From Hyaloraphidium curvatum SAG 235-1 (lineage: Eukaryota; Fungi; Monoblepharomycota): a stretch of DNA of 64,000 bases. The notes beneath the pieces are model-generated. The model did not search any database, had not been told where the DNA came from, and saw only the letters and a program-made list of their open reading frames with translations. Below are positions 37,971 to 61,936 of this stretch, piece by piece. The translations under genes were made by a program, and so were the position numbers. Each line of letters starts with the position of its first letter. Positions within the stretch are counted from its first letter, which is position 1. Location of the stretch: assembly GCA_025558095.1 (NCBI GenBank), contig JAIVFI010000017.1:620001-684000 (forward strand), written 5' to 3'.

Positions 37971-39033
37971 TCAAACAGCGATGCAATCAACCGCTCTCGG
38001 CCCCGCGTCCACAGCGAGCCACGCACCCTGCCCCTCCGCCCCGCCATACCGACCCCAGTCCCCAATGCGTTCCATCTCCCAGAACCACGGATGCGCCAGC
38101 GCCTCCGCGGCCGTTGCCCTCCGCCCCTGGTCCGGGCAAAGCATCCGTGTGACGAGGTCCCCGAAACCGTGCGAGAACCCCGCGGGCAGCCCCGCCCAGC
38201 GGCACTCGCAGATGGCAGCAAACAGCCCGTGGAAGTCCTCCGCTTGCGCGAAAGGGGTGCGGCCGGTGGCCAGCTCAACGGCGATGCAGCCCGCCGCCCA
38301 GACGTCCACACCGCGGCCGTACGGCAGGCAGCGGACGATCTCGGGGGCGAGGTAGAACGGCGTGCCCGCCAGCTGCGAGAACTGGCCCTGCGCATCCGTG
38401 CCAAAGTCCCCGCAGATGCCGGCGTTGTCGAAATCGGCCAGCGCGAGGTCCGAAGGGTCCGCTTCGGGGCGGCGGAGGAGGATGTTGGAGGGTTTGAGGT
38501 CGCGGTGGGCGATGCCTCGCGAATGGAGGTACGCGAGACCGGAGAGTATGGAGCGGAGGACGGGGCGGATGAGGTGCTCGGGGAGGGGGCCGTGCAGGGT
38601 GAGATAGGTGCGGAGGTCCATCGCGCAGAGCTCCATGACGGTGTAGACCTGTCGGAGCGGGGCGGAGTAAATTCAGGCAAACACTCCAATCTTCCAGCGA
38701 CGCAGATCACACCTTTGACCGGGTCTCGAACATCTCGAACACGCGGCAGACGTTCGGGTGGTTCAGCGACGACAGGGCACCGAACCGGTGCCGCGCCGCC
38801 CTGCGCTCGGCGGCGTCCGCGGGGCACCACACGCTCTTGACGGCGACCTCGCGCCTGTTGTCGAGGCACACCGCGGCGCGCACGCGGCCGGACGCCCCGC
38901 TGCCGAGAGTGGCCCCGGACGCGATGCGGCGGCGGCGTGCGCGGCCGGCGGCAAACAGCGCGGCGTCGGCGGCAGGCGGAGCGGGCAATGAGGCCGGTGG
39001 AGCCTCTCCGCCGCTCGCGCTCGTGAGCGCCAT
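37971..39033 (-). CDS. Atypical CAMK-like Ser/Thr kinase (DFD), copy 1
   Basis: FAAGRARRRR, LGSGASGRV, VAVK, HRDLKPSN, ADFDNAG, GTPFYLAPE, DVWAAGC; one intron ~38649-38712. Confidence 0.88.
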
Positions 39034-39724
39034 CGTGTTTGCCGGGGGTTCGGGTTCGATCAGGTGCTACGATGGGTGGCACTGCTCTGGCGGCGGGTGC
39101 CCGCAACAATTCGTCGGACTCCGCCCGGTCAGGTGCACGCGGCCGGCCCCGCGGCGCCCCTCTATTCACACAGTAGCCTTCTCGATGGTCCATTCGCACG
39201 TTTGCAATCTATCCCGCCCTTTCCGGCGCTTCGCCGGCCAGAAACGAGGGAGCTGCCGGGGGTGTCGAACCACGCGCTGACGCACAGCCACCACGCCCGG
39301 CGCACATGGCCCCGCTCACGGCAGGATTGTCCAACCCAACCGCGGACCTGCCCCGCACTATGCCGGCAGCTATGTTCCTCTCGGGACTATCGTTTGGCCG
39401 CGATTGGCCTCGCCGGACTGCCCGTAGCGGCGGCTTCCTTCGCTCGGGCCCGAAGGCACAGCACCGGCCACCCCGCCGACACCCCCGGTACCCGCCGATC
39501 CAGGCCAGGGCCTGACCTGACCTCGAACGAGAGGTCCGTGCTGCACCGCTTTCCACGTGGAGCGCCGGGGTGGGCGCGGGCCGGGAGCCGGAGGGGAGAC
39601 CCGCCCTGCCAGGTGATTCGGCGAGCCACCGGCAGATGCACGGCGACCGCAAGCTCGGGACCTTTTGCTTTTGCTTTGTTCATGTTGCTTGATCCTCTTT
39701 GCAAATGCTGCAACATTCGATGTC

Positions 39725-41980
39725 AGCTGTGAGCCGGAGGCGGAATAGACGGCGCGGCGATCGCGATTCTTGCCACCTTTGGCTTCATTACACGGCCACC
39801 TCCTAGTCAACCAACGGGCAGAAGCTCTCCATCGTGAAGAACACCCCCAGGGATCGAAACACGCTCCACAGAGCCACAGAGAGGGTGACCATCGTGACCA
39901 CCATGGTCCGCACGCCTCCGTAGGTGACGGTGAATCCCAGAATCTTGGCGCTGTACCGCGACACCTCGAGGAACGAGCCAATGACGCGGTCGTGCTGCTC
40001 CAGCGCGGCGGCGAGAGGGGTCGGTCCGAGCTTGAGGCACGCCGTGCGGAGGTCCCGCCGGGCATCGTGGTATGCCGATGCGACGACGGAGATGAGGTTG
40101 TTGCGCGAGGCGAGGTTGATGGCGTTGATGAGCATGTAGACGAGGACAATGGAAAGGCAAAAGAGGAGCCATGCGGGAATGCAGGACCCGACGCCCTGAC
40201 GGATGGCGGAAGCGCTAGATCAGTCCCAGATTGTCTTCCCCGAATCGTGTGTCACTCACGACATTGACAATGATTGTGATTACAATCAGAGGAAACATGA
40301 TGACAAACACGGAGTTGCTGAGCAGTGTCTGGTCCTGCATCTCGCGCACTTTGCACCAAGCTGCGAAGCCGTGGTGAAGCCGAACGTACAGCCAAGGCTC
40401 TGACCCGGTCGGCCGGTCCCCGAGTGCAGTTTGCAGCATGGATCTCATGGAGAGGACGACAGCACGATGGTGCAGCCGCGCTTCGAGCCTCGCGGACGCG
40501 ACGTTGGTCACCCCGACAAAGCGAGCTGCAGAGTTCATGAAGGATGCCACGGCGACACAAACTGCAGGTTGGAGATATGTGAGTCAGCAGAGTCATTCCT
40601 GCGACGGGCGTGCGATGGCCTGACTGTAGATGGCCCCGAGAACACAACCCCACCACGTGGACAAGAGTTTGGAGCCAAAAGTGATCCACGTGGTCCATCC
40701 GGCAGTGAAGGTGAAAAGGAATGAGAACAAGAAGTTGTAAACGATATCCAAGAAGGTCATGCAAGCTGCAAGCCGCTGAATATTGCCAACGCAGCCGGAA
40801 CACGGACAGAACCGGTCGCCCTCTTCGTGCGCGACGAGGAAGAGGCTTCCATCGAATGACCCACGACCAGGTTTTGGCCCTTCTTCCTTCCTCGTCAGCT
40901 GCAGCCATCTGCAGAGCACCGCCGGGGCGGCGAAATCCAGCACCTTTGGAACGCTGGGCATGGCCACCGCGACGAGGCCGATGGCAAAGAATCCAAGCGC
41001 AGTTGCGGAAACAACACCTGCGACCATCTGCTTCGTTCCGAAGAGGCCATCGTTCCATGACCAGGAGAGTCCTTGGAAAGCCAACATCATGCAATAGCAG
41101 AGTCCCACTTGCGCAGCGCTCCTCCACCCGAGGAAGCTTGCGCTCCGAGACGCGCCAAGAAAAGCGAACATTCGGAGCACGGGGTCGTCGAAGTCGGCCA
41201 GCATGGTTTCGAACGTCACGGGGTGCGCTCCTCGGAACTCGGCCGCGGGGTCGCCCCCCGCTTCCCCTGCTTCCTCGTCCGGCAGCAGCGGCCGGAACGG
41301 CGGCGTCGCGGCGGGGAACAGGCACACCCACTTTTCGGGCGAGAAATCGGCGTCCGGTGCGCTCGGGTCACCGTGCGGCGCGCTCGGGTCGCCGTGAGTG
41401 GTTGGGTCTGGGAGCGCAGGGACGCCCATTCCGTCGGCGGCGGGGTTGTTTTCTCCGCTCATGGCGCGAGTGCTATCGAGATGCCTCTTCAGGCCGACGA
41501 GCAACAAGCGAAGAATCCTCCGGCGTCTCGCGCTGTGGAAGTTTGGTCGCGTCGATCGCCTCAGGACGTGCCTCAGAACCAGAGCGAGAGGATAGATCTG
41601 CTTGGCAAGAGGTAGTGGCAAGAGGAGGGGAGAGGCGGCCCTTCGCTCGTCCCTCGCTTCGGCCTTCTCCCCTCTTGCTTCTTGAGCCGCTACGCGACTC
41701 ACCTCTTGCCACTGCTCCGGCCGTAACATCCTTTTGCCGAAATCACGGAAGGAAGTGATTTATCTACAACATGTTGGACCGTATCATTGCCGCAGGCTCT
41801 TCAGATTTGGATGCTCCGGTGCGGTCCAACGAGTCAACATCCTTCGAGCCCATTTTCGAGCCTCCGTTTGAGGGCCCAAACCCACATGAGACGCAGGCGA
41901 TACCTAGCGCATGGCAACTGAGTCCTCCAATCGCGACCTTCTGTGCCTTTGGTGCGCGAACCGCGCGCGTTTCTGCATCG
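39725..41980 (-). repeat. Segmental duplication, arm B (inverted copy of 17222-19350)
   Basis: Reverse-complement match to arm A, with an extra segment at ~41580-41720 upstream of the CDS. Confidence 0.92.
39803..41462 (-). CDS. Multi-pass membrane protein, putative 7TM ion channel / gustatory-receptor-like (GRL, DUF3537-like)
   Basis: Intact after removing intron ~40563-40625; no signal peptide; about 7 hydrophobic helices; C-terminal SFLEVSRYSAKILGFTVTYGGVRTMVVTMVTLSVALW resembles the 7TMIC TM7 region. The family call is an inference. Confidence 0.6.
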
Positions 41981-42197
41981 CGGAGCAAGGACGATCCCCG
42001 AGGGGTACGGCGGTCGCGGGCTGACGAACGGAACCAGGTGTGAAGCCATCGCTGCAGATATCATCTCTCCAAGGGCATCGTGTCCCCGTCCTCGGCGTCC
42101 ATGCGCACGTCCAACGACGGGATGAATTCTGCATCAGCACAAGACCGCACAACCCCATCGCTCTCCGCACAGCGGAAGCCACCGCCTGGCGCGCACA

Positions 42198-43383
42198 CTA
42201 TGCCTCCCCCGCCAGGCACCTCAGCTCCCCCGTCCTTTCGTCGAACGCCACCCACGCCCCCGCCCACCCCTCCCTCCCCATCCGCACCTCCCGCGGATCC
42301 CAGAACCAAGGATGCGCCAGCGCCCCCGCCGCCGTCACCCTCTCCCGCTGGTCCACCACCAGCATCCGCGCGACGAGGTCCCTGAACCCGGACGAAAAAC
42401 CATCCGGCAAGCCCGCCCAGCGCCCGGCGCCGATCGCCGCGTACAGCTCGTGGAAGCTCCCCGCGCCCTCGAAGGGGGTGCGGCCCGTCGCCAGCTCGAC
42501 GGCCATGCAGCCCAGCGCCCAGATGTCCACCTCACAGCCGTAGGGCGAGCCGCGGACGATCTCGGGGGCGATGAAGTACGGGGTGCCCGCGATGGTCCGG
42601 AACGGTGCGTGCGGGCCGAAGCCGGGATGGGAGGAGGGGGGTAACACCCGCGGCGTCGAAATCCGCAAGGGCGAGGTCCGACGGGTCCTCGTCCGGGCGG
42701 CGGAGCAGCACGTTGGACGGCTTCAGGTCTCGGTGTGCGATGCCCCGCGAGTGGAGGTACGCCAGGGCCCAGAGGATCGAGCGCAGGATGGGGCGGATGC
42801 GGTGTTCGGGGAGGGGGCCGTGCGCGTCGAGGTACGCCTGGAGGTCGGATTCGCAGAGCTCCATGACGGTGTAGATCTGGAGGCGGGAGCATCAGAACGA
42901 GCCCCACGGCACCAGCGAACACGCCTGGAGACTAACCTTGTGCTCGGTTTCGATCCGCTCGAACACGCGGCACAGGTGCGGGTGGTCCAGCGCCGCGACC
43001 GCCTCGAACCTCGCGCGGGCGGCTTCCCCGTCCTCCGGCGCGAACGGCGCCCACCCCAGCGCGTGCACCCTGCGGCAGCTCTTGAGCGCCACGCGCCGCC
43101 CGTCGTCCAAACAGACGGCCGCGCGCACGCAGCCCGTCGACCCGCCGCCGAGGGCCGCGTAGGCCGCGAACCGGCGGCGGCGCGCGCGCCCTGCCGCGAA
43201 GGGGCCCGCCGGGTCGACCGGCGGGGAGAGCTCCGACGCCGCGCGGGGGAGCTGCATGTGCCTGGGGCGTGCCGGGCAGGTGGCCGGGGCGGGGCGGCCG
43301 TCTTGCACACGCCAGAGCTGCCCCGGACGCGGGATCGCGACGGGCGCGCTATGGGCAGGCAATTGGTACGCTTCCGCGGCCAT
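42198..43383 (-). CDS. Atypical CAMK-like kinase (DFD), copy 2; +1 frameshift in a G6 run at ~42636-42641
   Basis: FAAGRARRRR, LGGGSTGCV, VALK, HRDLKPSN, ADFDAAG, then (shifted) IAGTPYFIAPE and DIWALGC; same intron position as copy 1. Confidence 0.82.
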
Positions 43384-44228
43384 GCTCGCGGCGGCAGCGG
43401 GCTCGGATAACGTCCGCGGATCGGATTGGTTCCGCGATGGCGTTGCGAATCCTGGGCGGGTAAAGCTCGGAGGGGCAAAGGGTCCGAAGCGAATCCGTGT
43501 TCCCCGGACAGTCCGATCGCCCACTATCGGCGCATCGGAGCGCATTCGGTGCACTTCCGGAGGCTTGCTCGGTATCTTCCACGTTGCCCGGCGGCCCATA
43601 CGCCCTGGTCCGATGAAGTCAAGTCGTTGCTATCGCACCGGCCGATTGGCACAGCCGCGGATCCCTTCCCGGCACCGCCCCGAAGGTGACCGGCCGCACG
43701 ATCGGACGACCGGAACCGATCCATCGGCCACCCTCCCGCGCATATCAATGCAGAACAGAGGGCGGGACATCGAGACGGGCGGTTTCCGCGGCGGGGGACG
43801 GTTCGTCATCCGGCGCCGATTACTCACGATCGGAGCCACTTTGCCCTGGGACCGATCCGGGATCCGGTGGCCGCACCGCACGGCGGGGACCACTGGATGA
43901 GCAATGTACTGCCCGCCGACGGCCAACCTTCGCCGGCGGGTGCCGGGCGGGCGGGATCGGGCACCGAGGCCACGTGCCGTGGGCGAAGTAAGGGGTAATC
44001 GGGGGCCAGTGTCCGCCCTTCGGTGCGGCGATGAGACAGTCCGTTGAAGAAATCAGATGACCTGCATCAAGCCCATGGGGAAGCGAGGACGGAAGACGGC
44101 CTAGGACTGGACGAGGATGACGGGCCCACCGTTGGTCGACGCCAGACCCCCCCCGCATCGACCTGCGTTCCGCATCGCGGGCCTCCACGCGTCCGGCCCT
44201 CTCCGGCGCCTCGTCTCCCCGCACAAAC

Positions 44229-45522
44229 ATGGCGCCGAAGCGCGCCGCGCGCCGCCCCGCCGCCCTCTCCGACTCCGACGACGACGCGCCGCCCGCCCGC
44301 GGCGGCTCCTCGGAGGGCCTCGAGTCGTCCGACGGCGGCGCGGAGGACGCGCCCGCGCCGCCGGCGGGGATGGGGATCGCGCTGCGGGGCGCGGAATCGC
44401 GGCACACCGGTGGGGTCACCGGACGGCACTCCCTGTCCCCCGGCTGAACGACCCCCGGCGACGCGGACGCCAGTCTACGGCAACGTGACCTTCTACGACG
44501 AGCGCACCAAGTCCCCCGTCGGCCTGGCCAAGGTCTGGAGCGTTGATTTCCCCTCGGTCCCGTGCGGTCCGGGCGCCTCCGTCGGGTGGACCACGCAGCG
44601 CGCCTTCGAGGTGTGCGAGCTCGTGCCGATCGTCAGGGAACTGTGGCACGCGCGGTCGGCGGCGCATCTGTCGGTACGAGATCAGGTCGCTCAGTAGGGC
44701 CTGCCGCTGCTGCACCGCGTCGCGGCCCGCTGACGTTCCGGGGCAGCCCAGAGCAAGGTCACCGTCCACATCGGCCCCTCTTCCGTGATCAAACCCCTCC
44801 CCCCCGGCGCGACGGAGGAGCACACGGTGACCGCCGGCCCCGTGAGCAGGATATCCCGGTCGCGGCAACAACTCTGGATCGGGTGCGCGATGGTGGAGGG
44901 GCAGAGGACGGTGGAGCTGGTGCTCAGCTTCGTGGGTTGCCCGCGCAACCGGGGGAGCGTGGTTGGGCTGATGCGCTGCGGCAGAAATCGGTGCCGGAGG
45001 AGGAGCAGAACCCGCGGCTCAAGCCCGGCCCGCTCCCGGCGTGGGTCGCCGAGGCGGACCGGCACCCCGACGCGGCGCTGCTCGGGACCAAGAAGCGCTC
45101 CCTCGCGCTCGCAGATTTGAAGAAGAGGGTGCGTCGGGTATGCGCTTTCCCGGCCCGGCTCACGCCCCGTCCGGCAGCTCGCCCTCGTCGACTGGATCCT
45201 TTCCCGCAACCCCGCGCTCACCCACCCCGCCCTACGCCTCTTCTTCCCCTCCCTCCCCTCGGACCAAACGATGAAGAACCACCGCCGCCAGATCCGCTGG
45301 ATCGAGGCCTGGGCCGAGGACGTACCATCCATCCGGCATGCGGTGGGGGAGGGGACCGGGTTGGGGAAGCTGAGGCGGATGGTCAAGGGGGAGCAGGAGA
45401 GGAGGAAGGGGGCGAGGGAGGGGGATCCGATGGCGGTGAGGAGGTTGGTGGCGGGGGAGGTTGCGGGGGTGGGGAAGGGGGAGGGGTCGTCGCCGATGAG
45501 GAACGTGAAGTCGGGGTGGTGA
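44229..45522 (+). CDS. Hypothetical multi-exon protein
   Basis: MAPKRAARR start; four GT-AG introns join continuous coding segments; one apparent -1 C near 45237; no family recognised. Confidence 0.5.
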
Positions 45523-45697
45523 GGTTGTGGTTTTCAGGAATGAATGCTTGCAATGACGCTGGAAACAAGGTCAAAGAATCACTATGGAGTCGTCCACGAA
45601 AAGGTCACCCCTGCCCAATTTTGTCCCGCGCAACTGCCCTGTCACCACGTAGATCCCCGAATCACCCGCCACAACCGTCCCAACCCTCGAGATTCTG

Positions 45698-46940
45698 CTA
45701 TCCCTCAGGGCGAGCGATGTGGAGCACCTTTGGGCCGGAATACGGTCCCTCGCTCCAGCACTCGAACCCGAGCCACTCGGCATATCCCCGGAGCGCGGAC
45801 CTCCGGTTCGCGAGCAGCCCCTCGATCGGCGGGATCGGCGACGCTTCCGAATCGGAAGCCAGGGCTTGCAGGGAGGGCCGGCCGGAAGCGCTCGACGACC
45901 TCCACGCGCTCCTGGTACCTCGCAGCCTTCTTCTTCGCGTCCCTCTCCTCCTTTCCCTTGCGCTGCTCCGCCTCCCGCGCCCGATGCAGCTCCTGCCGCT
46001 CCTCCTCCGCGGCCTTGCGGGCCTTGGCGCTCTCCCTCGCCTCGTGGACCCACGCCGCGCGGTGCGGCAGGCCCTCGGGACCCCGGGCCGCGACGTATTC
46101 CGCGATCGCCCGGTCCCGCGCGCGCGACTCGGCGCTCCAGACGGCTTCGTACGTGCGCCTGCTGAAATCGCCGCGGTACCAGTTGGCGGCCGGGCCTGCC
46201 GCGGCCAGGGCGCGCGAGTGGATGTCGAGGTAGCGCGTGTGCGCGAGGAGGAACTGCAGCGTTTCGAGCTCGTCGAGGAGACGGGGGAGGCCGTCGGAGT
46301 AGAACTGCCGGAGGTGGCCGAGGATCCAGCGCTGGGATACGTGGAGCTTGCAAAGGCTGACGTAGCCCCGATCGCGCTGCGCGATCGGGTGCACCTCGTG
46401 CCGCAGGCTGTCCGAAGTCGGCAGCCTCCTCGTGGAACCGCGGTTGGCAGGCAGCTTTTCGTCGAGGTACTTCCGGTAAGGATCCGCCGCGCGGCCGAGG
46501 GCAACGTCCCCCGAGACCTCCGCGAGCCGCCTCCAGTCGAACGCGTCGTCCTCCACTTGGGCCTGCCACTGATGCCACAGCTCATCGTCATCCTCGACAT
46601 CCTTGCGGCTGCCGTAAAGAGGGTTGATCTGCATGAGGAAGTCGGGCCGCGCGTCGCGCATCCTCCCGGCGACTCGGGCAAACGCGTCGGCCGAGCAGCC
46701 CTTCAGGTCCTCCGGCTCCACAAAGCGGGCGAAAATGTCCACGGGCATGGGTCGCCCGAGATACATCGGCAGGCAGGACAGCAGCGCGGCCGGGCCGTCC
46801 AGGAGCGCGAGCCGCCACATGGGAGACGTGTCCACTTCGAGGCCGTCCGCGGCGACGAACGCCTGGAGCGCGGCCATCGTGGGCACGTCGGGAGCGACGA
46901 AGGGGGACACGAGCTCCACGAGGAGCGAGAGGCGGGACAT
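45698..46940 (-). CDS. Hypothetical protein with degenerate R3H-like tail, copy 2 (inverted paralogue of 36520-37752)
   Basis: N-terminus nearly identical to copy 1 (RLSLLVEL.SPF.APDVPTMAALQ...); +1 base in a C/G run near 45872 before QALASDSEASPIPPIEGL. Confidence 0.7.
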
Positions 46941-47335
46941 TGAGGGCAAAGCGGGGCAGCTGAGTTTAAGGACGCGACGGGACCGCTTTTGAGACAGTCG
47001 CGACTTGCAACTCCATCCACTTCGCCATTGGATGCCTCAGCTGCTCGAACAGAACATGACACGATGCATGAGGATTAGTCTGTGCCATCCATCCTGAATT
47101 TCTTAGCCAACGTCAGGCCCAGAAGTGGATCACATCCAGGGCGACATCGCTATAGCGCTATCCTCGGGCGCTTGCTCATCCCGCTCCCTTGGCACTCCGC
47201 TTCCGGGCCTCTGCAGAACGCGCTAGACGTGCGCCCGAGCTCTGCCTCCCCGTAATTCTCGTGCCCTGGTTAGTGGCGTGCTGCCCTCCGTGTCGCGAGA
47301 CCCTGCTCGAGCTCCGCGCCCCCGGCAAACAGAAG

Positions 47336-49097: not shown

Positions 49098-49330
49098 GCG
49101 TGGTGTCGATCCTGAGGACGAAAAGGGCTATTCTGACACAGACATGTATCGCCAGCAGACAACAATGCCAATGGAGTCAATCAGTAGTCAATCAGCAGTG
49201 AATTAAGCAGTCCAGCGATCCTCGCTCTCTTCCGCGGCCGCAGCACCACGTAGGCTCAGCGAACCCATCGTCTTCCCCCGTGCCTCCGGCCAGCCAGACG
49301 AAACCCGCAACTCAACAAACCGCCGGATCG

Positions 49331-50381
49331 TCAGGCGGCGACGCACCGCAGCTCCCCAGTTCCTTCGTCGAAAGTCACCCAGGCCCCCGCTCCCGTTGGC
49401 CCCTGCTGCCTCCCTCCGCCGCGGGATTCCCAGGACTCCCAGAACCACGGGTGCGCCAGCGCCTCGGCCGCCGTCATCCGCTCCCGCTGGTCCACCACCA
49501 GCATCCTTCCCACGAGGTCCCTGAACGCGGCCGAGAACCCGGCGGGCAGCCCGCCCCACCGGCCGAGCTCGATCGACGCGTACAGCTCGCCAAAGTTGGC
49601 CGCGCCCCCAAACGGCGTGGAGCCGGTGGCCAGCTCCACGGCGATGCAGCCCAGGGCCCACATGTCGACCTCGCTGCCGTAGGCGGCGCCGCGGACGATC
49701 TCAGGGGCGAGGTAGAAGGGGGTCCCCGCGATCGTCTGGAAGGGCGCCTGCGCGAAGAAGAAGTTTGGCGACGAGGAGCACACCCCCGCCGCATCGAAAT
49801 CGGCGACGGCCAGGTCCGACGGGTCCTCCTCCGGGCGGCGGAGGAGCACGTTCGAGGGTTTGAGATCGCGATGCGCGACGCCGTTTGCGTGGAGGTATGC
49901 GAGGGCGGAGAGAATCGAGCGGAGGATGGGGCGCAGGGAGCGCTCCGGGATCGGGCCGTGCGAGTGGAGATAGGCCTCGAGGTCCGTTGCGCAGAGCTCC
50001 ATGACCGTGTAGACCTGGGGCCGGCGGTGGGTCAGAAGACCATGAATCAATAGCAGGGGTATAAATCACCTTGCCCTCGACCTCGATGAGCTCGAGCAGG
50101 CGGCAGAGGTTCGGGTGGTTCAGCTTCGCCACGGCCCGGAACCTGGCCCGCAGCGCGTCGCGCTGGGAGGCGGGCGCGCTGCAGCTCTTCAGCGCGACCC
50201 GCTGCCCGCTGTCGAGGCAAACCGCGCCGCGCACGCGGCCGGACGCCCCGCTGCCGAGAGTGGCAAAGGACGCGATGCGGCGGCGGCGTGCGCGGCCAGC
50301 GGCAAACAGCGCCGCGTCGGCGGCCGTCGGCGGGGGAGGCGAGCCCGGTACTGCGGGCGGGGAGTCTCTCGCGAGGCCCAT
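49331..50381 (-). CDS. Atypical CAMK-like kinase (DFD), copy 3
   Basis: FAAGRARRRR, LGSGASGRV, VALK, HRDLKPSN, ADFDAAG, GTPFYLAPE, DMWALGC; same intron as copies 1 and 2. Confidence 0.88.
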
Positions 50382-52715: not shown

Positions 52716-52905
52716 TGCGGTGCGGGAGGTGTGGCGGCGCCGAAAAGAGGATTTGGCGAAGGGCGTCGGCGCCGACTCGGCCGCTCACTTGCCGCTTCCT
52801 CACTCGGGCTCACTCCGAAGTCAGAAGTCAGAATGCAATGTATAGCACAAAGCTGAAGCAGATACAATAAGGATGGTTGCGAGGCGAGCATGCTCGTGAA
52901 CGCGA

Positions 52906-53392
52906 TCACGCCTGCTGCTGCGAGGCTCCGGTCGCCGCGCCCTGCTGGTTGCCGCCGCCGCCTTTGCTCTTCTTCTTCTTGAAGCTTCCCCACCACTCAG
53001 GCTGCTTCCCGCATACCTGTACGGGGCACGAGGACGTTCAGCAGAGCGCCATACAGTGCTGCGACGAGGAAATCACCTGCTTGTGCTCGGGCCAGTCGGC
53101 CCGCTGGCACTCGACCGAACAATACTTCACCATCTTGCACTTTGCGCAGACCTGGAACTTGCGGCCCGCGGGCTCCTCCTTCGTATCTTGGGCGCGCGGC
53201 GCGTCCCAAGAGTTCCAGGTGCCGGGGCGGGTGCGGGCACGAAATGGCTTCGGCCAGCGCGCCGATGACGCCGGTGGTGCTCTGGAACAAGGCAAAGACG
53301 TCGGGCGGCGGCGGGTACGAGGGCCCGTGCTTGCACGACGTCTTTGGCTCGTAGTCGTCGATGAGCGACCCTCTCGGGCCTTTCGGGGGCAT
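52906..53392 (-). pseudogene. Internally deleted MYND zinc-finger gene (paralogue of 55964-57049)
   Basis: Shares the N-terminus (Y.PKT.CKHGPS.P) and C-terminus (C..CKMV.YC...CQ..DW.EHK|.CGKQPEWWG, same intron) with the long copy, but lacks the middle and the first CxxC; the two halves are in different frames. Confidence 0.65.
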
Positions 53393-53552
53393 CTTGGTGG
53401 GGAGTGGGGAACCGCAAGGGTTCACTCCGGACGAGCCGGCACAGTCCGACGATTCGCAGGTCGCCCTTCACCGGATGAGCCTACGATTCGACCTCATCCG
53501 CACTGGAGCGACATCTCGGTCGATCTACGACATCACCTATTAGAAAAATGCC

Positions 53553-55774
53553 TCAGAGTTCCAGCTTGGCGACTGCCGGATGCCATCCCGCCTCCTTCAG
53601 GAGCCTCTTTGGCACGTCCACCAGCTTGGCCCGGAAGTACTCGCCCACGCTCTTGGACAGCATGTCGAGCCGCATGTTGGACATGCAGCCCTTGCCCAGC
53701 AGCCCCCGGATGAGGAAGTGCACCGCGCGCACGTTGGGGAACTCGATCCGCTCAATCGAGATATTCATCCCCTTGCCTTCCTCGGCCAGAAGCTCGGTGA
53801 AGAAGTCGAGGGTGAGCTTGGACCGCAGCCAGTCGTAGGACGAGTCGGTCAGCGTCCCTAATCGACAGTAGGCGCGTCAGAAGATGGCGGAGGCAAACGT
53901 TGGAAAGAGACCCACAGAAGCCGACGTTCGAGTTGCCGCCCTTGTCGCCGGACCGCGCGTGCGCGATGTAGCCGAGCGGTACTCGGATCGTTTCGCCAAA
54001 GTCGTCCGAGGTGGTCGACTGCGGCGGGTTCTGCTCCGCGTACGAAGGCGGGATCGCCGAATCCGGAGCCTGGCCGATCGGCACCACGGTTCCGTCAGGG
54101 AGGGTCGCACGGTGGGGAACCTTGTCGTAGGCGAGGAGGGCGGGGTAGAATTCGACGTAGGAGGGGAAAGCAGGGCCGGCCTTGGGGCCCCAGACGCCGG
54201 TCTGCCGAAAGGGTGAGAGTCAGACCCAACGAGCTTCTGGCAAGCTGGCTGCCACTCACGTATCCGGGGAAGCCCCGGAGGAATTGCTCGCTGGCCACCT
54301 TCCTCAGCCTCATCAGCGCCAGCCGCTCAGGCGCCTGCGCCGTGATGCGGACCAGCGACGTAGCCGCGTTCTCGTCCACCGGGTTGCCCATCGGCCGCCC
54401 GATCAGCTCGAACTTGACGAAATCGAAACCGTCCGCGGACCCCGTGCCCACCGGGATGTCGGCCACGTCCGCCAGGACCTGCTTCTTCAGCGTCTCGAAC
54501 TTGATGTCCACGTCCAGGCCGACCGCGCCCGTGTAGAGCTCCAGCTCGTAGCCGCCAAAGATGTTGATGCCGACCTTGGTCGTCGGCGGCGGGGGCAGGC
54601 CCTTGATCCCGTGGATGCGAACGCGGTCCTTGCCGACCTGCTCCAGGTGCACGGTGCTGAGGTCGACCGTGGCGTCGGGGTTGAGGTAGTAGCGGCCCTG
54701 GATCTCGTAGACGATTTGGGCGAGAACGGTGTCCGTCGTGACGGCACCGCCGGTGCCCTCGAACTTGGTGATCACGGCCGAGCCGTCCCGGTCCAGTTCG
54801 GCCACGGGGTAGCCCTGGGGGCGGGGCAGTGGTGAGTCTTTTTGCCGAAGGTGGCGCCCCCTTGTGCCAACTCACAACAGCCTCGATCCCGGGCAGGGTC
54901 AGGAAGCCGGAGAAGTTGCCGCCGGTACAGTGCCCCGAGCACTCGATCACGTGGCCAACGAGGACCGCTGATGCAAGGACGTCGTACTGGTTTTGTTGCC
55001 AGTCGAACCAGTCTGCCCGGCCAGCGAGATCAGAGAAGTTTATCCCCGGGCCGACGTCAACCCACAGGCCCCGATGCCGGCCGTCAGCGACGCATCCGTC
55101 ACGCGCCCGCAGATGACGATGTCCGCCCCGCCGCGCAGCGCCGCCGCGATCCCAAACCCGCCCATGTACGCGTTGCCGGACAGCAGCTTCTTGTGCTTGT
55201 TCTCCGCCAAATACCCGGCCAGCGTCTGCCCCTTGGCGTCCAGGTTGTCGAAGCCGCACCCTTCGGACTGCAGCCTCGCAATGTCCTCGGGCGACAGCGC
55301 GTCCCCGTCCACGGTGGCCACGGTCAGGTCCAGCCCCTTGCTCGCGAGGAGGTCCCGCACGCCCCGCGCCAGCTTCTCGCACTCGTCCCCGCCGGCGTTG
55401 GTCACCATTCTGATCTTCTTCTCCTTCAGGAGGTGGACGGACTTGGAGAGGTCGCCGAGGAAGAACTGATGGAAGAGGTCCGTCGGCTGGCCATTGAGCT
55501 TGAGGTTCGCGACGATGCCGAACGTGCCCTCGGCGAGGTAGTCGCCGTTCACGAAATCGAGGTGCGTGGGCGTGCCGGGCATGCCCGAGTTCTCCAGCTG
55601 CGTGGAGAGGCCCTTGCTCCAATCGCCCGCGTCTGCGCGGCCGCGGGGGTCAGCGACATTCCGCCGGGCGAGCGCGTCGCACCCACAGCCGTGCCAGTTT
55701 CCGATCCGGACGGGGCGCTTGCCGCGGTCCTCATCGTGGGCCGAGCCGTCGGTCGACTGCGAGATTGGGGCCAT
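53553..55774 (-). CDS. Acyclic terpene utilisation AtuA family protein (DUF1446)
   Basis: GDYLAE, VTNAGG, NAYMGGFGIAAALRGGADIVICGRVTDAS, GHVIECSGHCTGGNF, YEIQGRYYLNPD, HARSGDKGGNSNVG. Confidence 0.92.
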
Positions 55775-55963
55775 CGCTGCTGTTTGAGGGGGACACGGGG
55801 AGACGGGCCGGGGCGGAGTTTACCCGCCATGCGCCGTTGGCGTCTCGCCGCTTCGTGGCAAACTGGTGCGCCATTTGGTCGAGAGATTCTTTTCCAAGGT
55901 ACACATGCATCCAAATATCTAGCTCACGAACCATCTCCCGAGCTGGATTGCCTCTGTGGCTGC

Positions 55964-57049
55964 TTAGCCGGAGCTTGAAGACGAACCAGGACCGTTGGCG
56001 TCTTCGGGCCCGTTCTTGGCCTTCCTCAGCGTACCCCACCACTCGGGCTGCTTGCCGCAGATCTGCAACCGGCCAATGTCAGACAGTCAGTGATCGTTGC
56101 TCGGCAAACATCATCACACGGATCCCCACCTTCTTGTGCTCGTCCCAATCGCTGACTTGGCAATCTTCGGTGCAGTACGCCACCATCTTGCACCGCGAGC
56201 ATTTCTTCAGCGGATGCTTCTTTGTTCCCGTCCCGCGACAGCGGCGGCAGTACGAATCGAACAGCTTGCCGTTGCCCGGGGCGCCGACGCCGGGCTTCCA
56301 CGCCGGATCGTCCTTGAACAGGTCCTCGCGCCCGCACAGCTCGGACTCGGGGTCTTCGACCTCCAGGCAGCGGCACGGCACAGCGGTCTTGAGCTTCGAT
56401 AGAAGATACTCTGGAGTGCATCTCTCCGTGGCTTTGTTGACGAAAGCGGGCAAGATCTCCTTGGCCGGCGCCGGGGATCCTGGGCGGTAAGCCAGGTAGG
56501 GCGTGCCCCAGGGGGTCGTCGAGCTCGGGTGGTCCAGCATCAGCTGGAAGAGACACTCGGTCGGCAGAGGGGAGCTCGTGCGGGCCCGTCGGGCCCGTTT
56601 GTTCCGGGGGAGCTTCCCGCCGGGCCCGGCCTCGAGCGGTTGCACGGCCCGGTGCGGGAGGTACGCGTCCCTCGCGGCCAGGGAAGCGCGCAGCATCTCG
56701 CAACAACCCAGAACCCGAACGAGGCCTCGAAGTCGTGGTTGAGGAAGGCGTCGACCGCGGAGCCGAGGTGGACGTCCGCGAGCGCGGCGTCGACCATCGG
56801 CCGGCCAAAGAGCCGGGAGCACCCGCGCTCCGCCGAGTGCAGCTGGCCTGCAACCTCGCAAAGAATCCGACGCCGCTGCCCGGGGTCGGGGCACGCGAAG
56901 GCGCGGACCAGGGTGTCGGTCGCGCCTTGGACCGCTGTCGCGGCGAAGGTGGTGCAGGGCAGCATGGGGTGCGACGGGCCGTGCTTGCACGCCGTTTTGG
57001 GCACGTATTCGTCGCGCAGGGCGTTGGCAGACGACCTCTGGGTGGGCAT
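55964..57049 (-). CDS. MYND zinc-finger protein
   Basis: C-terminal CRRC...CSRCKMVAYCTEDCQVSDWDEHKK|IC; one apparent -1 G near 56708. Confidence 0.78.
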
Positions 57050-57253
57050 CGTTGCGAGCGAGGGGTGGAGCCTGGGTTGACAGGGTTCTGTGATTGAAGA
57101 CCAGGGGTCGGGATTCGGAGCAGCTTGACTCCACTACGCGCTTCACTCGACAGATCGCTGGCTCCACAGTCGTTCACTGGTCAGATTTGTAAATGAATCA
57201 ATCTGAAAACATCAAGTCCTTGTCAAACTTCGCGCAGTCTGTCCCAGGACCGC

Positions 57254-57853
57254 TCATAAGACGACCACCATCCTCGGCATGCCACCACCAATCTTGCTCC
57301 CGGCAACGGCGTCCCTCAGCCCCGCGTTTCCCGTGGCCACCGGAATCGTCCTATGCCCGTTGCCCTCGACGTGGAACCTGTACCTGTGCCTCCACCACCC
57401 GCCGAAAACGTCGCCCTCCCCCGGATCGCACACCTCCCACGCCTCCTCCACGATCCCCTCCACAACGTGCGCCTCGCTGGCGAAATCTACCTTTCCAACT
57501 CCCGGCTTGTACCCCTTCAGCTTCGCCGAGTCAGCCGGGTCGCACGCGCAGAGGTCTGCGACCAGAAGGATCCTGTCATTGATCGCGATGCCGGGATGGC
57601 AGGGGTGGCCCCATTCCGCGAGGGCGCCGGGGGGTACATTCCTCGCGGCGAGAAGGAAGTGCTCTGCGCAGCGGGAGTTGCTCTTGGCGATAGTGACGGC
57701 GAAGGTGCGAGGGCTGTGCACAGGGCGAGGAGCGGGGCCCGGGGCAGGGGCGGCGGCGGGCCGAGGGACGGAGGGCCGTGAGCGGAGGGAGTAGCTGTGC
57801 TGGGGCGTCGTCCCGATGCCGGAAGCAGCGGTCGGTTGCGCGTCGGGAAGCAT
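57254..57853 (-). CDS. Hypothetical protein
   Basis: Open frame with a globular-looking C-terminal ~140 aa (TFAVTIAK...NDRILLVAD...WRHRYRFHV); no family recognised; start uncertain. Confidence 0.45.
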   Translation of the reverse strand: MLPDAQPTAASGIGTTPQHSYSLRSRPSVPRPAAAPAPGPAPRPVHSPRTFAVTIAKSNSRCAEHFLLAARNVPPGALAEWGHPCHPGIAINDRILLVADLCACDPADSAKLKGYKPGVGKVDFASEAHVVEGIVEEAWEVCDPGEGDVFGGWWRHRYRFHVEGNGHRTIPVATGNAGLRDAVAGSKIGGGMPRMVVVL

Positions 57854-58138
57854 GTCTGGGCGAAATTGGGTGATGTGACGATGACTTGGCCCGCGAGCTT
57901 CGGTGACTCGCCCCGCGCGCCGTCTTCCCCACGCACCACGCCGCTGCGCGCTCGGCGAGACCGATCGTGTTGTCCAGAGCGCATCCATGCTAGCACCACG
58001 CGGCAGAACAGCTCTCCGACTCATCGGTCTCTTAGCGCATTTTCCTAGTCAGCCCTCAGCTCCCTGACCTCCGCTCTAACCGGTCCCTGATCGGACCCCT
58101 AGCCCGCCGTCGGCCGCATCCCCCACCCCCTCCCCGCC

Positions 58139-59657
58139 ATGTCCGCGCCCGCAGCGCCCGTCGTGGGCGGCTCCGCCGCCGCACCGAAGCCCAAAGAGCC
58201 CAACTGCATCGCCAAGGTGGGCGGTTTCGGCGCTGTGGCCGCGCGGGGGAGCTGACGCGGTCCGGCGGCCCGCAGTGCTTCCTGTGCCTCGGCAACTCGC
58301 CCGCGGGGACGACAACCACGGGGAGGCTGATCACGCAGCTCGTTTTTATCGGGTGCCTGGTCGTGACCACGCTCTCGTCGATCCCGGGCGCGCGCTATCT
58401 TTACTGGGGCTGTGGGTCTTCTTCCCCGATCCAAACGCCCCAGGAAGGGGCAACGACGGCCTCTGACCCCTTTTCCGCGCCCTTAGGGATCCTCTCCCTC
58501 CTGTACACAGTGGCCGCCGTGTGCGGCATCTACTTTGCCCTGCAGGACCTCATCTGCCTGAAGCGGGACTGCGCGCACTGGACCACGGGGCTCGTGCACC
58601 CGTGCTGGTACGGCTGCCTGATCTGCCTGGCGGGAGGGGTGGGTTCTACAGTCGGAGAGGGTCAGGAGGGCACGGGGAGGGGTTGGGGAGGTCGGCCGGC
58701 GGGGTCGCGTTACCAGCGCGGGGCGGGCGGCCTCCCTGCCCTTCCGTCGGGCTCCTCGGCCTCATGAGGTCAGATACTGACCGTTTTCTGCTGCCGATAG
58801 TTTGGATTCGCCATCTATGTCCTCATCTGCTTCACGGGACCCATTATCTCCGGGTTCGGCGTCAACTGTGTCGACGTGGGTCTTCCTCTCCCATCCCACT
58901 TCCTTCCCCACTCACCGCCCTTGTTTCCCACCGCCACATGCCTGTTCGGCACGCCAGATCTTCGGCCAGGACCCCTCTCAGATCCAGATCCCCCAGGAGA
59001 ACGCCAACCTGTGCGCGCAGTACAAGGACCTCTGGCGCGCCGGCGCCGGGACCACGGGCTCGGGCATGGGCTTCGCGATTGCGAGCGCGTGCCTGATCAT
59101 GGTGCTCTACATCGGGCTGTGGGTGTCTCGGCGGCGCCGCGGAACGGATGGCGGCTGATCCGGGAGGGACAGGCCGACGATCCAGAAGAAGTACAGGGAG
59201 GCAAACAGCGAGCGGAGGGAAACCAAGGCGGCGGCGGACGCCAAGGCCGCCGCGGACCTCGAGGCGCAGAAGGTGCGGAACACGTCGGCGGCATTGGCCA
59301 CCGGCCCGCTGACCCTCCCCTTCCCTCCCCCCACCCCGCCGATCCCCTTCCCGCGCGCCCGCTCGGCAGGCCAAGATCACCCAGGAGTACAACGTCCCCA
59401 CCGCCGCCCTCGCCGCGGGCACCAAGCTCACCTCCAAGTACGACTACGCGCCCACGCGCGCCGACGAGCTGGAGCTCAAGGCCGGGGACCAGATCACCCT
59501 CGTGGACCAGGGCCGCGTGGGGACGCCGGTGGGCTGGTGGACGGGGACCAACGCGCGGACGGGGCAGACGGGGCTGTTGTGGGTGTCTCGGCGCTGGGTG
59601 CGGTGTGGGTTCGTCGGCTAACGGAGTTCGTTCTGCAGCCCGGCGAATTACATCTAG
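58139..59657 (+). CDS. Four-TM membrane protein with C-terminal SH3 domain (Sho1-like topology)
   Basis: Four hydrophobic segments over several exons, a charged helix, then KYDYAPTRADELELKAGDQITL...GWWTG...GQTGL|.PANYI. Confidence 0.8.
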
Positions 59658-60587
59658 AGTATTATGGATCGTGTTTGGAATGGAGAGCTCTCGCTTTGCG
59701 CACGTGTGGGCCGGCGGAGGACCGGACGGCCGCTCGGGATCGGGCGGCATCCCCCGCGAGTGACCCGCCGCGCCGTCCTCCTGCTCACGGTCGGCCGCTG
59801 TCCCGCTGCCCGCCATTTACTGCCAGTCGTCTGTCGTGCTGGGATCAGTCCCACCGGGGAGGCGGTTCGCTCATCCCTCGCCCGTGGCGGGCGGTGGTTC
59901 TTGGCGGCGGAAGCAACAGCGCCAATTCGCCGCGCCAGCCCCGGAGCTTCTCGCCTCATTATCGCCCGGGCGCGATCAAGGATTCGCGATGGGTGCCCGG
60001 CCGCGTGGTCGCCGGTGGAAGGTCGCGCGAACGAGGGACGGGCGGGCGGCCGGTGGTGACTCGTCCGGAGGCTATGCTGGGTCCGCCAAAACCTCGTTCG
60101 ACGCCGGGGGCAGCGGGGACGGGGTGCGCCGGGTGACCGAGGACGGGGAGAATGTGTCTAGCCGCAGGGAAAAATTAGGAGCGGTCGCGGGGTGGGAGAG
60201 ATGGGCGTGGCAATTTCTTTGGTCGGTGGGAAAGTAGGTGTCTGGGCCCGCAGAGCCCGCAACCCGGCCGAGTCTGCGCCGCCTTGGAAGGCGGGACAGC
60301 GAGCATCGAAAAAATCGCCCCCAGGAACAGGCACATGGACCATCTCTGCACGGTTTCCAAACATATCGGGTGCAACGGATGCGCTCCCCGGCCGGGGTAG
60401 CCGCGTCAGAATCTTGGGATGGCGCAAGGGAATTCCGCGCGAGCAACGATCCTTCGGATCGGACCCACCGGCCTGACCGCCTGCAAACTCCACACCATTC
60501 ACTTCGAACAGCGCGGAAGCACTACCGCGCATACCGCATAAGCAGACAACACCCGCACTCCCCCGAGGAGTGCCCTCTTTGGCCCCA

Positions 60588-61936
60588 ATGAGCCCGAACG
60601 CCCGCTCGCCGCCGCCGCTGCCGGGGTCGCCCGGCCCGCCGTCGCCGCCGTCGGTGTCCGGCTCGCCGCAGCCGGGCGACTCGGACGTCACGGCGGTCGC
60701 GCAGGACAACGCGCAGTCCGCGGAGATGTCGGCCACGCTGCCGCCGGCGTCGCCGCGCCCGCGGCCCGCCGGCCTGTTTGCCGGCGACGCCTTCCCCGGC
60801 GTGCAGGGCATCCTGCGGCCCGAGCCCGCCGACCCCCCGCCGCCCCCGATGCTGGACGACTCGGCCTTCGCCGCCGGCCGCGCCCGCCGCCGCCGCTACC
60901 GCATCCTGGAGCGCGTCGGCCAGGGCTCGGAGGCAAAGGTGTCGGCCGCCCTCTCGCTCGACACGGGGCGCATGGTCGCGATCAAGGTGTCGCGGAAGCC
61001 CGTGCCCGGCATCGCTTGCCCCACGGAGCAGGCCAGGACCTTTGCCGCGATCGCAGGTGGGCATCCGGGCGGCATCCCGCCGTGCTGGGAGCGCAGCTGA
61101 CTCGGCACCTCCCCCCTTCCCGCAGCTCTGAAGCACCCCAACATCGTCGAAATGATCGAGCAGTTCGAGACCGAGTCGAAATCCTACACCGTCATGGAGC
61201 TGGCCGCCGGGGTGGGCAGAACCGTCGCCCATTATATGAGTCACGTGCTAACGCACCGCCGGCTCCGCAGGACCTCGAAACCTTCCTGCAGTGCCGCGGC
61301 CCGCTCGGCGAGGCCGAGATCCGCACCATCCTGGCCTCCATCCTCCGCGCCCTCTGCTTCCTGCACTCGCGCGGCATCGCCCACCGCGACCTCAAGCCCC
61401 GCAACATCCTCCTCCGCTCCTTCGACGACCTCTCCACCCTCTGCATCTCGGACTTTGGCGGCGCGCACGTGCCCATGGGCCCGCTGTTCCCGCCGCCGGG
61501 CGTGCCCACGATGCACCGCATCGTCGGCACCCCGCTCTACCTCGCCCCGGAGATCGTGCGCGGGCAGACGCCGTACAGCGCCGAGGTCGACCTCTGGTCC
61601 CTCGGCTGCATCGCGTACCAGCTGGCCTGGGGCCGCACCCCCTTCGGCGACTCGGACAGCCTGCTGCACCTCTTTGCCCGCGCCATCGGCGGGCGCTGGT
61701 CGTTCCCGACCGGCGCGAGGCAGGGCGCCTTCGCAGACTTTGTCGCCGCCCTGCTGCGCCCGGATCCCGAGGGCAGGATCTCGGCCGAGGGCGCGCTGGA
61801 GCACCCGTGGATGAAGGGCGTGCCGGTGGTCGACGGGCCGATGTACTCGCCCGCCCCCATGCCGGCGATCGAGGCGCTCGAGGTGATGGGCGGCGAGAAG
61901 GGGGACACGAGGCGCTTCTCCCGCATCTCCGTGTGA
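60588..61936 (+). CDS. Atypical CAMK-like kinase, copy 4 (DFG retained)
   Basis: FAAGRARRRR, VGQGSEAKV, VAIK, HRDLKPRN, SDFGG, GTPLYLAPE, DLWSLGC; two introns at positions different from copies 1-3. Confidence 0.88.

What the first reader, a model, noticed from the sequence alone, without database searches (positions are those of the whole stretch)
37971..61936. Four-member atypical kinase family: alphaC Glu missing, DFG>DFD, conserved FAAGRARRRR leader
Seen: four paralogues (37971-39033, 42198-43383, 49331-50381, 60588-61936) keep the beta3 Lys, HRDLKPxN and APE. The residue 9 positions before the HP(N/H) motif is Arg, Arg, Arg and Thr (RFGALSSLNHP, RFEAVAALDHP, RFRAVAKLNHP, TFAAIAALKHP). 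Three copies read DFD (38427-38435, 42655-42663, 49793-49801). All four carry FAAGRARRRR just before the N-lobe. Known: in CAMKs that position is normally the alphaC Glu that salt-bridges the beta3 Lys, and DFD is a rare variant best known from MNK1/2. Inference: a lineage-specific kinase or pseudokinase class with a non-canonical activation mechanism, in which the Arg-rich leader may be a pseudosubstrate, NLS or structural substitute.
Basis: partly seen in the sequence, partly recalled or inferred. Interest (0 to 1): 0.8.

Follow-up and report, generated by a model that had tools for sequence, protein, structure and literature searches.

The report
Fungal kinase family without αC glutamate
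The four genes are real members of a family of about 47 CaMK-like protein kinases in the chytrid-like fungus Hyaloraphidium curvatum. These kinases keep every catalytic residue but have replaced the almost universal αC-helix glutamate with arginine or lysine, which makes them a natural test of whether a kinase needs its Lys–Glu salt bridge.

Summary
There are four intron-containing Pkinase genes, each with FAAGRARRRR before β1. The αC-Glu position holds Arg, Arg, Arg and Thr, and three genes read DFD.

The family is not four genes. At least 47 distinct paralogues exist in this genome (Hyaloraphidium curvatum), and at least 6 more in one unidentified relative (run SRR26194948). No other organism in two very large protein searches has them.

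The family branches from fungal CAMK1/CMK-type kinases. In H. curvatum the αC position is Arg/Lys in 35 of 47 and Glu in only 7. The change arose at least 3 times by parsimony. The DFG glycine is relaxed (D, A, T, S, N, C), and the aromatic G-loop tip is lost (E, Q, S). Among 38 αC-basic members, β3-Lys, HRD-Asp, the catalytic Asn and the DFx-Asp are each kept in 36–38.

The Arg-rich leader is predicted with high confidence to be the N-terminal cap helix that DAPK1 and PhKγ also have. It corresponds to the KKKNY patch of fungal CMKs, so it is not a free pseudosubstrate.

Gene B is transcribed but frame-broken.

Best reading: these are active kinases with a re-wired N-lobe. This is inferred, not shown.

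The parts
37971..39033 (-). Gene A (equals annotated protein P0002, 332 aa). Exon 1 is 38710-39033, the intron is 38646-38709, and exon 2 is 37971-38645 including the stop. αC Arg, DFD, G-loop GSGASG.
   Evidence: P0002 maps exactly onto the window. Pfam Pkinase hits. An RNA-like contig covers 38065-38501.
38926..38955 (-). Leader FAAGRARRRR of gene A. It is predicted to be part of an N-terminal helix (P0002 residues 21-35) running into β1.
   Evidence: AlphaFold pLDDT is 89-97 over this stretch. DAPK1 residues 3-277 align to model residues 26-298.
38785..38787 (-). Codon of Arg83 of gene A, at the αC-Glu position.
   Evidence: Alignment to CaMKIV 2w4o and CIPK23 4czu. Coordinates.
38427..38435 (-). 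DFD of gene A.
42198..43383 (-). Gene B. Exon 1 ends at 42937, and the start is at 43383 or 43257. The intron is 42877-42936. Exon 2 runs 42198-42876 with a one-base frame change within 42620-42645. αC Arg (RFEAV at 42979-43011) and DFD at 42655-42663. It is transcribed, so it is probably a pseudogene or encodes a truncated product.
   Evidence: Contig record 15 of run X2 (42288-42876) has no gaps and shows the 60-nt intron removed with CT..AC ends. The public model P0126 skips the activation loop and fuses the gene to its neighbour.
49331..50381 (-). Gene C. Exon 1 is 50070-50381, the intron is 50015-50069, and exon 2 is 49331-50014 including the stop. Leader at 50277-50306, αC Arg (RFRAV at 50112-50144), DFD at 49793-49801, and the tail motif GAWVTFDEGTGELR.
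   Evidence: Only a partial gene call (P0001) is in the protein database.
60588..61936 (+). Gene D (equals annotated protein P0127, which starts at 60849). Exons are 60849-61055, 61125-61211 and 61271-61936. Leader at 60867-60896. Thr at the αC position, split across intron 1. G-loop GQGSEA. DFG at 61451-61459.
   Evidence: P0127 maps exactly onto the window..

Best explanation
The four genes belong to a clade-restricted, tandemly expanding family of short (about 320-430 aa) Ser/Thr kinases derived from fungal CAMK1/CMK-type kinases. The family is most likely still catalytic, but its N-lobe has been re-wired.

Three changes define the re-wiring:
- The αC glutamate that normally holds the β3 lysine is replaced by Arg/Lys.
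- The aromatic G-loop tip is replaced by Glu, Gln or Ser.
- The DFG glycine is no longer required (Asp, Ala, Ser, Thr, Asn, Cys).

My inferred mechanism is that the β3 Lys binds ATP without a Glu partner. The αC Arg/Lys is then held in the 'αC-in' position by an acidic side chain, supplied either by the G-loop tip (Glu) or by DFG+2 (the second Asp of DFD). It may also contact the nucleotide phosphates directly.

The Arg-rich leader is the CAMK N-terminal cap helix, an Arg version of the fungal CMK KKKNY patch. A family-specific C-terminal β-hairpin (G..V.[FY]DE.TGEL) is an added element of unknown role. Most members keep a Thr at the CaMKK-type activation-loop site, so activation by T-loop phosphorylation is likely.

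Shown here: family membership, the substitutions, their distribution and order, retention of the catalytic residues, and transcription of A and B. Inferred only: catalytic activity and the Arg–acid pairing.
For: - Identity and register: Pfam PF00069 on all pieces. Arg83 aligns to the αC Glu of CaMKIV and CIPK23. AlphaFold models have pLDDT 85.8 and 83.7, and match nucleotide-bound DAPK1 and substrate-bound CaMKII (active PhKγ 1phk at Z 33) at Z 33-34 and rmsd 1.7-2.1 Å. The αC helix spans residues 74-88.
- Family size: 47 distinct H. curvatum members, with αC R 32, K 3, E 7 and other 5. DFx counts are DFG 19, DFD 14, DFA 4, DFT 3, DFS 2 and others 5.
- Catalytic residues in 38 αC-basic members: G-loop G1 37 and G2 38; β3 K 36; HRD D 37; catalytic-loop K 38 and N 38; DFx D 38; APE E 35; T-loop Thr 30.
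- Selection: dN/dS among A, B and C is 0.24-0.54.
- The basic residue is not a GC artefact. A relative with 53% GC has Lys at the same position with DFS/DFT.
- Recurrence: at least 3 Glu↔basic changes by parsimony. A tree forcing a single origin is rejected (AU p 0.024).
- Possible partner: of the αC-basic members tabulated, most carry Glu at the G-loop tip. Of the 14 with S/T/G/N there, 13 have DFD.
- Leader: a confident helix (pLDDT 89-98) that overlays the DAPK1 and PhKγ2 N-termini. Fungal CMKs carry KKKNY at the same place.
- DFD is compatible with activity in MNK1/2 (PMC3326643).
Against: - No activity data exist.
- An Arg next to the β3 Lys is electrostatically unfavourable.
- In MNKs, DFD favours an inactive DFG-out state.
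- dN/dS is high for a kinase.
- Single members have lost β3 Lys (L014 ALTA, P0370) or the HRD Asp (L047 HRA). Gene B is frame-broken.
- The G-loop-Glu versus DFD pattern rests on only 2 independent changes on the tree, so it has no statistical weight.
- Five αC-basic members (Gln tip with DFG) have neither acid.
- The tools return no model coordinates, so no contact could be inspected.
Confidence: 0.5

Rival explanations
1. The αC-basic members are pseudokinases. They would be nucleotide-binding or scaffold proteins that keep the fold and most motifs but no longer transfer phosphate. The Glu→Arg change would lock the Lys–Glu switch off.
For: - The residue that defines the active αC-in state has reversed charge.
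- The DFG Gly and the aromatic G-loop tip are lost.
- dN/dS is relaxed at 0.24-0.54.
- There is rapid birth and death, with a frame-broken transcribed copy, and sporadic loss of β3 Lys or HRD Asp.
Against: Among 38 diverged paralogues (about 35-45% identity), β3 Lys, HRD Asp, the catalytic Lys and Asn, the DFx Asp, APE and the T-loop Thr are each kept in 30-38 of 38. Known pseudokinase families typically lose at least one of K/D/D. The models resemble active CaMKII and DAPK1, although AlphaFold tends to give that state anyway.
Confidence: 0.3
2. The canonical salt bridge survives. A nearby acidic residue of αC (for example E76 in AAERR of gene A, the Glu/Asp two positions after the Arg, or the Asp/Glu four positions before it) takes the place of the missing Glu by a shift of the helix.
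For: About half of the αC-basic members have Asp/Glu four residues before the Arg ('D-L-R-R-R', 'E-L-R-R-K'). Several have Asp/Glu at +2.
Against: No such position is conserved. Gene A has no acid within one turn (E76 is at -7). Gene C has Asp at -5, and gene D has Glu at -4 only. The spacing to the HP motif and the hydrophobic pattern (position +1 Phe, +4 Leu/Val) match CaMKIV without gaps. The predicted αC helix (74-88) places Arg83 in the same helical turn as the canonical Glu. A Glu-type member also carries an acid at -4 (L013).
Confidence: 0.07
3. One reading: FAAGRARRRR acts as a pseudosubstrate or a nuclear-localisation signal rather than as part of the fold.
For: It is a run of 4-5 Arg. 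In A and C it is followed by Ser, giving RRRRIAS, a basophilic-kinase consensus. In B the same position reads RRRRFAA. A basic run could serve as an NLS whatever its structure.
Against: - It ends zero residues before the β1 aromatic residue, so it cannot reach its own active site.
- The Ser is not conserved in the family.
- It is predicted as a confident helix packed on the domain.
- It overlays the ordered N-terminal segments of DAPK1 and PhKγ2.
- The same basic patch exists in ordinary fungal CMKs and in Glu+DFG paralogues.
Confidence: 0.1

Closest known systems
Fungal CAMK1/CMK-type kinases (e.g. Puccinia 'CAMK/CAMK1/CAMK1-CMK' P0142, Umbelopsis P0094) and animal CaMKI/II/IV, DAPK, PhKγ
   Same: - They are the best sequence and structure relatives outside the family.
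- They share a basic patch directly before the β1 Tyr/Phe.
- They share an HRDLKPxN catalytic loop and GTPxYxAPE.
- They share a Thr at the CaMKK-type T-loop position.
   Different: - αC Glu is replaced by Arg/Lys.
- The G-loop tip Phe/Tyr is replaced by Glu, Gln or Ser.
- The DFG Gly is relaxed.
- No recognisable autoinhibitory or calmodulin-binding helix is present. Instead there is a short tail with a β-hairpin motif, G..V.[FY]DE.TGEL.
- There is a per-domain profile score gap: 314-487 bits inside the family and at most 241 bits outside.
MNK1/MNK2 (MKNK1/2)
   Same: They are CAMK-group kinases with DFD in place of DFG, and MNKs are active enzymes (PMC3326643).
   Different: MNKs keep the αC Glu and carry MNK-specific inserts. 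MNKs are not among the 60 best PDB sequence matches or the 50 best structural matches. In this family DFD is one of eight or more alternatives at that position and arose inside the family, so the resemblance is convergent.
Pseudokinases or atypical kinases lacking the Lys–Glu pair (e.g. HER3 with αC His, WNK with a displaced Lys; recalled from memory, not tested here)
   Same: They depart from the canonical β3-Lys/αC-Glu pair.
   Different: Here only the Glu partner is changed, and to a residue of opposite charge. All three residues used to define pseudokinases (β3 K, HRD D, DFG D) are retained. There is no sequence relationship.

Membership tests
Eukaryotic protein kinase domain (Pfam PF00069) | Profile match above the gathering score across both lobes | tested here: met
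   C-lobe exons score 129-154 bits (cut-off 31.7). N-lobe exons score 20-31 bits alone, just under the cut-off because they are short. Whole proteins P0002 and P0127 are listed with PF00069.
Eukaryotic protein kinase domain (Pfam PF00069) | Catalytic residues: G-loop glycines, β3 Lys, HRD Asp, catalytic Asn, DFG Asp, APE Glu | tested here: met
   Each is present in 35-38 of 38 αC-basic members, and in A, C and D. B has them but in two reading frames.
Eukaryotic protein kinase domain (Pfam PF00069) | αC Glu forming the salt bridge with β3 Lys | tested here: not met
   Arg (A, B, C) and Thr (D) occupy the position aligned to the Glu of CaMKIV and CIPK23. The position is Arg/Lys in 35 of 47 family members.
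CAMK group / fungal CAMK1-CMK subfamily | Closest sequence and fold relatives are CAMK kinases | tested here: met
   CaMKIV, CIPK23, DCLK1, CDPK and CaMKII head the PDB sequence hits. CaMKII, DAPK1 and PhKγ head the structural hits at Z 33-34. Outside the family the best profile hits are CMK/CaMK-type.
CAMK group / fungal CAMK1-CMK subfamily | C-terminal autoinhibitory and calmodulin-binding segment | tested here: inconclusive
   The proteins end 35-90 residues after the kinase domain. In P0002 the tail is disordered. In P0123 it is a β-hairpin (350-363, pLDDT about 76-80) followed by a low-confidence helix at 379-395. No structural match extends beyond about residue 348. No calmodulin-binding test was run.
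MNK1/2 | DFD motif together with αC Glu, MNK-specific inserts and closest similarity to MNK | tested here: not met
   DFD is present in A, B and C, but αC Glu is absent. MNK is not among the best sequence or structure matches. DFD arose within the family.
Pseudokinase (sequence definition: loss of β3 Lys, HRD Asp or DFG Asp) | At least one of the three residues missing | tested here: not met
   All three are present in A, C and D and in 36-38 of 38 αC-basic members. Whether activity is lost for other reasons cannot be tested with these tools.

The most novel reading that the evidence does not exclude
This would be a natural class of catalytically active eukaryotic protein kinases that works without the Lys–Glu salt bridge. 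An αC Arg/Lys of inverted polarity would be clamped by an acidic residue on the Gly-rich loop tip or at DFG+2. The solution was reached at least three times within one fungal lineage and then amplified to about 40 genes.
Probability: 0.3. Interest if true: 0.75.

Novelty: new variant of a known kind. Interest (0 to 1): 0.58.

Why it matters
The β3-Lys/αC-Glu pair is one of the most conserved features of protein kinases. It is the textbook marker of the active state, and inhibitor design and pseudokinase prediction both lean on it.

This family offers about 40 paralogues with a basic residue at that position while the rest of the catalytic machinery is intact. Sister paralogues that still have Glu+DFG sit alongside them. 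That gives a ready-made set of natural variants for asking three questions:
- Is the salt bridge dispensable?
- What replaces it?
- What does the DFG glycine contribute?

The result also shows that kinome annotation based only on the K/D/D residues would class these proteins as ordinary kinases.

If the proteins prove inactive, this would instead be a large, recently expanding pseudokinase family defined by an unusual lesion.

Tried and rejected
- Four-member family: rejected. Genome-wide search and profile chaining give at least 47 members.
- Leader as a unique feature: rejected.
- MNK relationship: rejected.
- P0128 (336 bits) as an outside relative: rejected. It is a two-domain protein with canonical Glu+DFG.
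- Multi-domain top hits of the large search: their scores are sums over several domains. Per-domain rescoring removed them.
- Covariation of the G-loop-tip acid with DFD: the pattern is striking in counts. Only 2 independent changes lie on the tree, so no test is possible. It is kept only as a hypothesis.
- An acid at αC-4 or +2 as a substitute partner: not conserved.
- Naming the organism behind SRR26194948: no paper mentions the run. I only showed that it is a relative. A DEDDh exonuclease is 73% identical to its H. curvatum counterpart, GC is 53%, and the kinases are not in G000.
- Literature: no paper on H. curvatum kinases was found.
- Contacts of the β3 Lys in the models could not be read, because the structure tools return no coordinates.
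- Joined (spliced) proteins were not sent to any search tool. Exons were searched by reference, and the stored annotated proteins P0002 (gene A) and P0127 (gene D) stood in for the spliced products. No full-length product of gene C or gene B was searched.
- In scripts, exon fragments were merged only by profile column, for local column counts and trees.
- The large search lists only 150 proteins (lowest total score 316 bits). Single-domain relatives scoring 241-316 bits in other organisms cannot be excluded by that search alone. The two word searches found none.
Full report
**What is there**

The window is G000:C17:620001-684000 of a 31.9-Mb, roughly 67% GC genome. The database names its proteins as Hyaloraphidium curvatum.

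Six-frame reading shows four Pkinase genes with short GT..AG introns:
- Gene A, 37971-39033(-), two exons. It is identical to annotated protein P0002.
- Gene B, 42198-43383(-).
- Gene C, 49331-50381(-), two exons.
- Gene D, 60588/60849-61936(+), three exons. It is identical to P0127.

**Register of the αC residue**

HMMER alignments of P0002 to solved CaMKIV (2w4o) and CIPK23 (4czu) are ungapped from αC to the HPN motif. They put Arg83 on the αC Glu.

The AlphaFold model of P0002 has mean pLDDT 85.8. It has αC at residues 74-88 and superposes on CaMKII, DAPK1 and PhKγ at Z 33-34 and rmsd about 2 Å. So Arg (A, B, C) and Thr (D) do replace the Glu.

E76 of 'AAERR' lies seven residues earlier. 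No acidic neighbour is conserved in the family.

**Size and limits of the family**

The N-lobe exon of gene A finds 49 places in the genome. I fetched 47 loci. I then chained exon fragments by a family profile and added annotated proteins from the searches. This gives 47 distinct H. curvatum members. Many lie in tandem arrays, for example C46:0.2-8 kb, C15:700-716 kb and C43:392-424 kb.

All members share three features:
- a leader of the form hG[RKH]xRR[RK]x[YF] running into β1;
- an otherwise canonical kinase core;
- in most members, a C-terminal motif G..V.[FY][DN]E.[TL]GEL.

A word search with a family profile found only H. curvatum proteins at or above 235 bits. An exhaustive HMMER search of 1.84 billion representatives, rescored per domain, gives family domains at 314-487 bits and nothing else above 241 bits.

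All named family hits that I looked up are H. curvatum. Five unnamed hits come from one Logan assembly, SRR26194948. A sixth member, unlisted, lies on contig L048. That organism differs from G000:
- its best kinase identity to G000 is 45-50%;
- its GC is 53%;
- a DEDDh exonuclease on one of its contigs is 73% identical to the H. curvatum one.

A last word search seeded with those lower-GC sequences again found only these two sources. The family is therefore restricted, as far as the databases show, to H. curvatum and one relative.

**States and their order**

Counts in H. curvatum:

| Position | Counts |
|---|---|
| αC | R 32, K 3, E 7, A 2, L/S/T 1 each |
| DFx | DFG 19, DFD 14, DFA 4, DFT 3, DFS 2, and DFN, DFC, DWD, DLT, DLA 1 each |
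| G-loop tip | E 22, S 9, Q 9, others 7 |

The relative has K+DFS twice, K+DFT once, and E+DFG/DYG three times.

I built an IQ-TREE tree that leaves these three columns out and is rooted on ordinary CAMKs of the same genome. It places the Glu+Gln-tip+DFG members basally. Arg+Gln+DFG and Arg+Glu-tip+DFG/x members come next. A well-supported derived clade (SH-aLRT 99) has a relaxed DFG glycine. That clade contains all four window genes and three members from the relative.

A, B and C form one tight subclade (Ser/Thr tip, DFD). D (Glu tip, Thr, DFG) lies elsewhere in the derived clade.

Glu↔basic needs at least 3 changes. Forcing a single origin costs 28 log-likelihood units (AU p 0.024), though the group was defined after seeing the tree.

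**Are they enzymes?**

In 38 αC-basic members, the following are retained:

| Residue | Kept (of 38) |
|---|---|
| G-loop G1 / G2 | 37 / 38 |
| β3 Lys | 36 |
| HRD Asp | 37 |
| Catalytic Lys / Asn | 38 / 38 |
| DFx Asp | 38 |
| APE Glu | 35 |
| αH-αI Arg | 38 |
| CaMKK-type T-loop Thr | 30 |

dN/dS among A, B and C is 0.24-0.54.

This pattern is hard to reconcile with a dead fold, so I favour retained phosphotransfer (0.5) over a pseudokinase role (0.3). MNK1/2 show that DFD is compatible with activity, although it favours a DFG-out resting state there (PMC3326643).

**What might replace the bridge**

The columns that best separate αC-basic from Glu-type members include the G-loop tip. That position is Phe/Tyr in ordinary CAMKs, Gln in Glu-type family members, and Glu in most basic-type members.

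Among the αC-basic members tabulated, 14 have S/T/G/N at the tip and 13 of those read DFD. Only 3 of the acid-tip (Asp/Glu) members carry Asp at DFG+2. This suggests that the αC Arg/Lys is clamped by one acidic side chain, from either the G-loop tip or DFG+2.

The evidence is weak. The tip acid changed state only twice on the tree, so no independent-contrast test is possible. Five members have neither acid. No coordinates could be inspected.

**The leader and the tail**

In both models the leader is a confident helix (P0002 residues 21-35, pLDDT 89-97; P0123 residues 49-64, pLDDT 93-98) running directly into β1. Structural alignments to DAPK1 (chain residues 2/3-277) and PhKγ2 (10-293) begin inside it.

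Ordinary fungal CMK-type kinases carry SKKKNY, ERKKNY or RKKKNY at exactly this place. Family members with Glu+DFG carry the leader as well. It is therefore an inherited structural cap, made Arg-rich here and in the relative. It is not a device linked to the αC change. An additional NLS role is not excluded.

The C-terminal motif is predicted as a β-hairpin of moderate confidence in P0123 (350-363). It has no structural counterpart in the PDB matches. In gene A it has decayed and is disordered.

**Gene B and expression**

Between DFDAAGV and FRTIAGTPYF the frame of gene B shifts by one base. The region includes a six-base run at 42636-42641.

Run X2 behaves as RNA, because its contigs lack the introns. 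One of its contigs spans 42288-42876 without gaps and joins 42876 to 42937 across the 60-nt intron. So B is transcribed and spliced, but frame-broken.

The public model P0126 avoids the problem by skipping the activation loop and fusing B to the neighbouring 7TM gene.

Gene A exon 2 is also covered by an X2 contig. These are contigs, so they show presence and not expression level.

**Limits**

Genes B and C were searched exon by exon only.
- The large search lists only 150 proteins.

Noticed in passing
window 6306-7010 (+) and 8280-8975 (+): Two further kinase-like ORFs of a different family. Their catalytic loops read HGDLKAGN and HGDIKAGN (the HRD Arg is replaced by Gly). One has IDFGMA and GTEGFNAPD; the other lacks a DFG.
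   Followed up: no
window 36000-40948, equal to G000:C47:101469-106420: Contig C47 repeats this part of C17 at 100% identity, including gene A. It shares further parallel matches (C47:82705-84820 and C17:637236-639351). This is probably a redundant contig or haplotig, or a very recent segmental duplication.
   Followed up: partly
window 39803-41462 (-): The 7TM gene between kinases A and B is by far the best represented stretch in the RNA-like run X2 (word depth 180-530, against about 10 for the kinases). Two introns (40195-40258 and 40562-40624) are removed in its contigs. Public model P0126 fuses this gene to kinase B.
   Followed up: partly
window 38343: One DNA contig of run X1 lacks one base here, inside exon 2 of gene A (depth 9.2 of 14.4). 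The RNA-like contig agrees with the window. This could be an allele, the second copy or an assembly error.
   Followed up: no
window 38710-39033 versus 50070-50381: Exon 1 of A and C has dS 0.14, against about 0.6 in exon 2, and the protein is identical from the leader to β2. This suggests gene conversion of the 5' part between the two paralogues.
   Followed up: partly
G000:C25:9416-10345 (+) and 23360-24289 (-) (L022, L023): An inverted pair of identical 572-aa ORFs encodes a family member that reads DLA in place of DFG, with αC Arg.
   Followed up: no
L048-L052 (Logan SRR26194948 contigs): An unidentified relative of H. curvatum (GC 53%) carries at least six family members, including a tandem pair. 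The αC position is Lys where H. curvatum has Arg.
   Followed up: partly
C-termini of family members, e.g. window 49334-49400 (gene C) and P0123 residues 348-363: A conserved family-specific tail, G..V.[FY]DE.TGEL, is predicted as a β-hairpin. It has no Pfam match and no PDB counterpart.
   Followed up: partly
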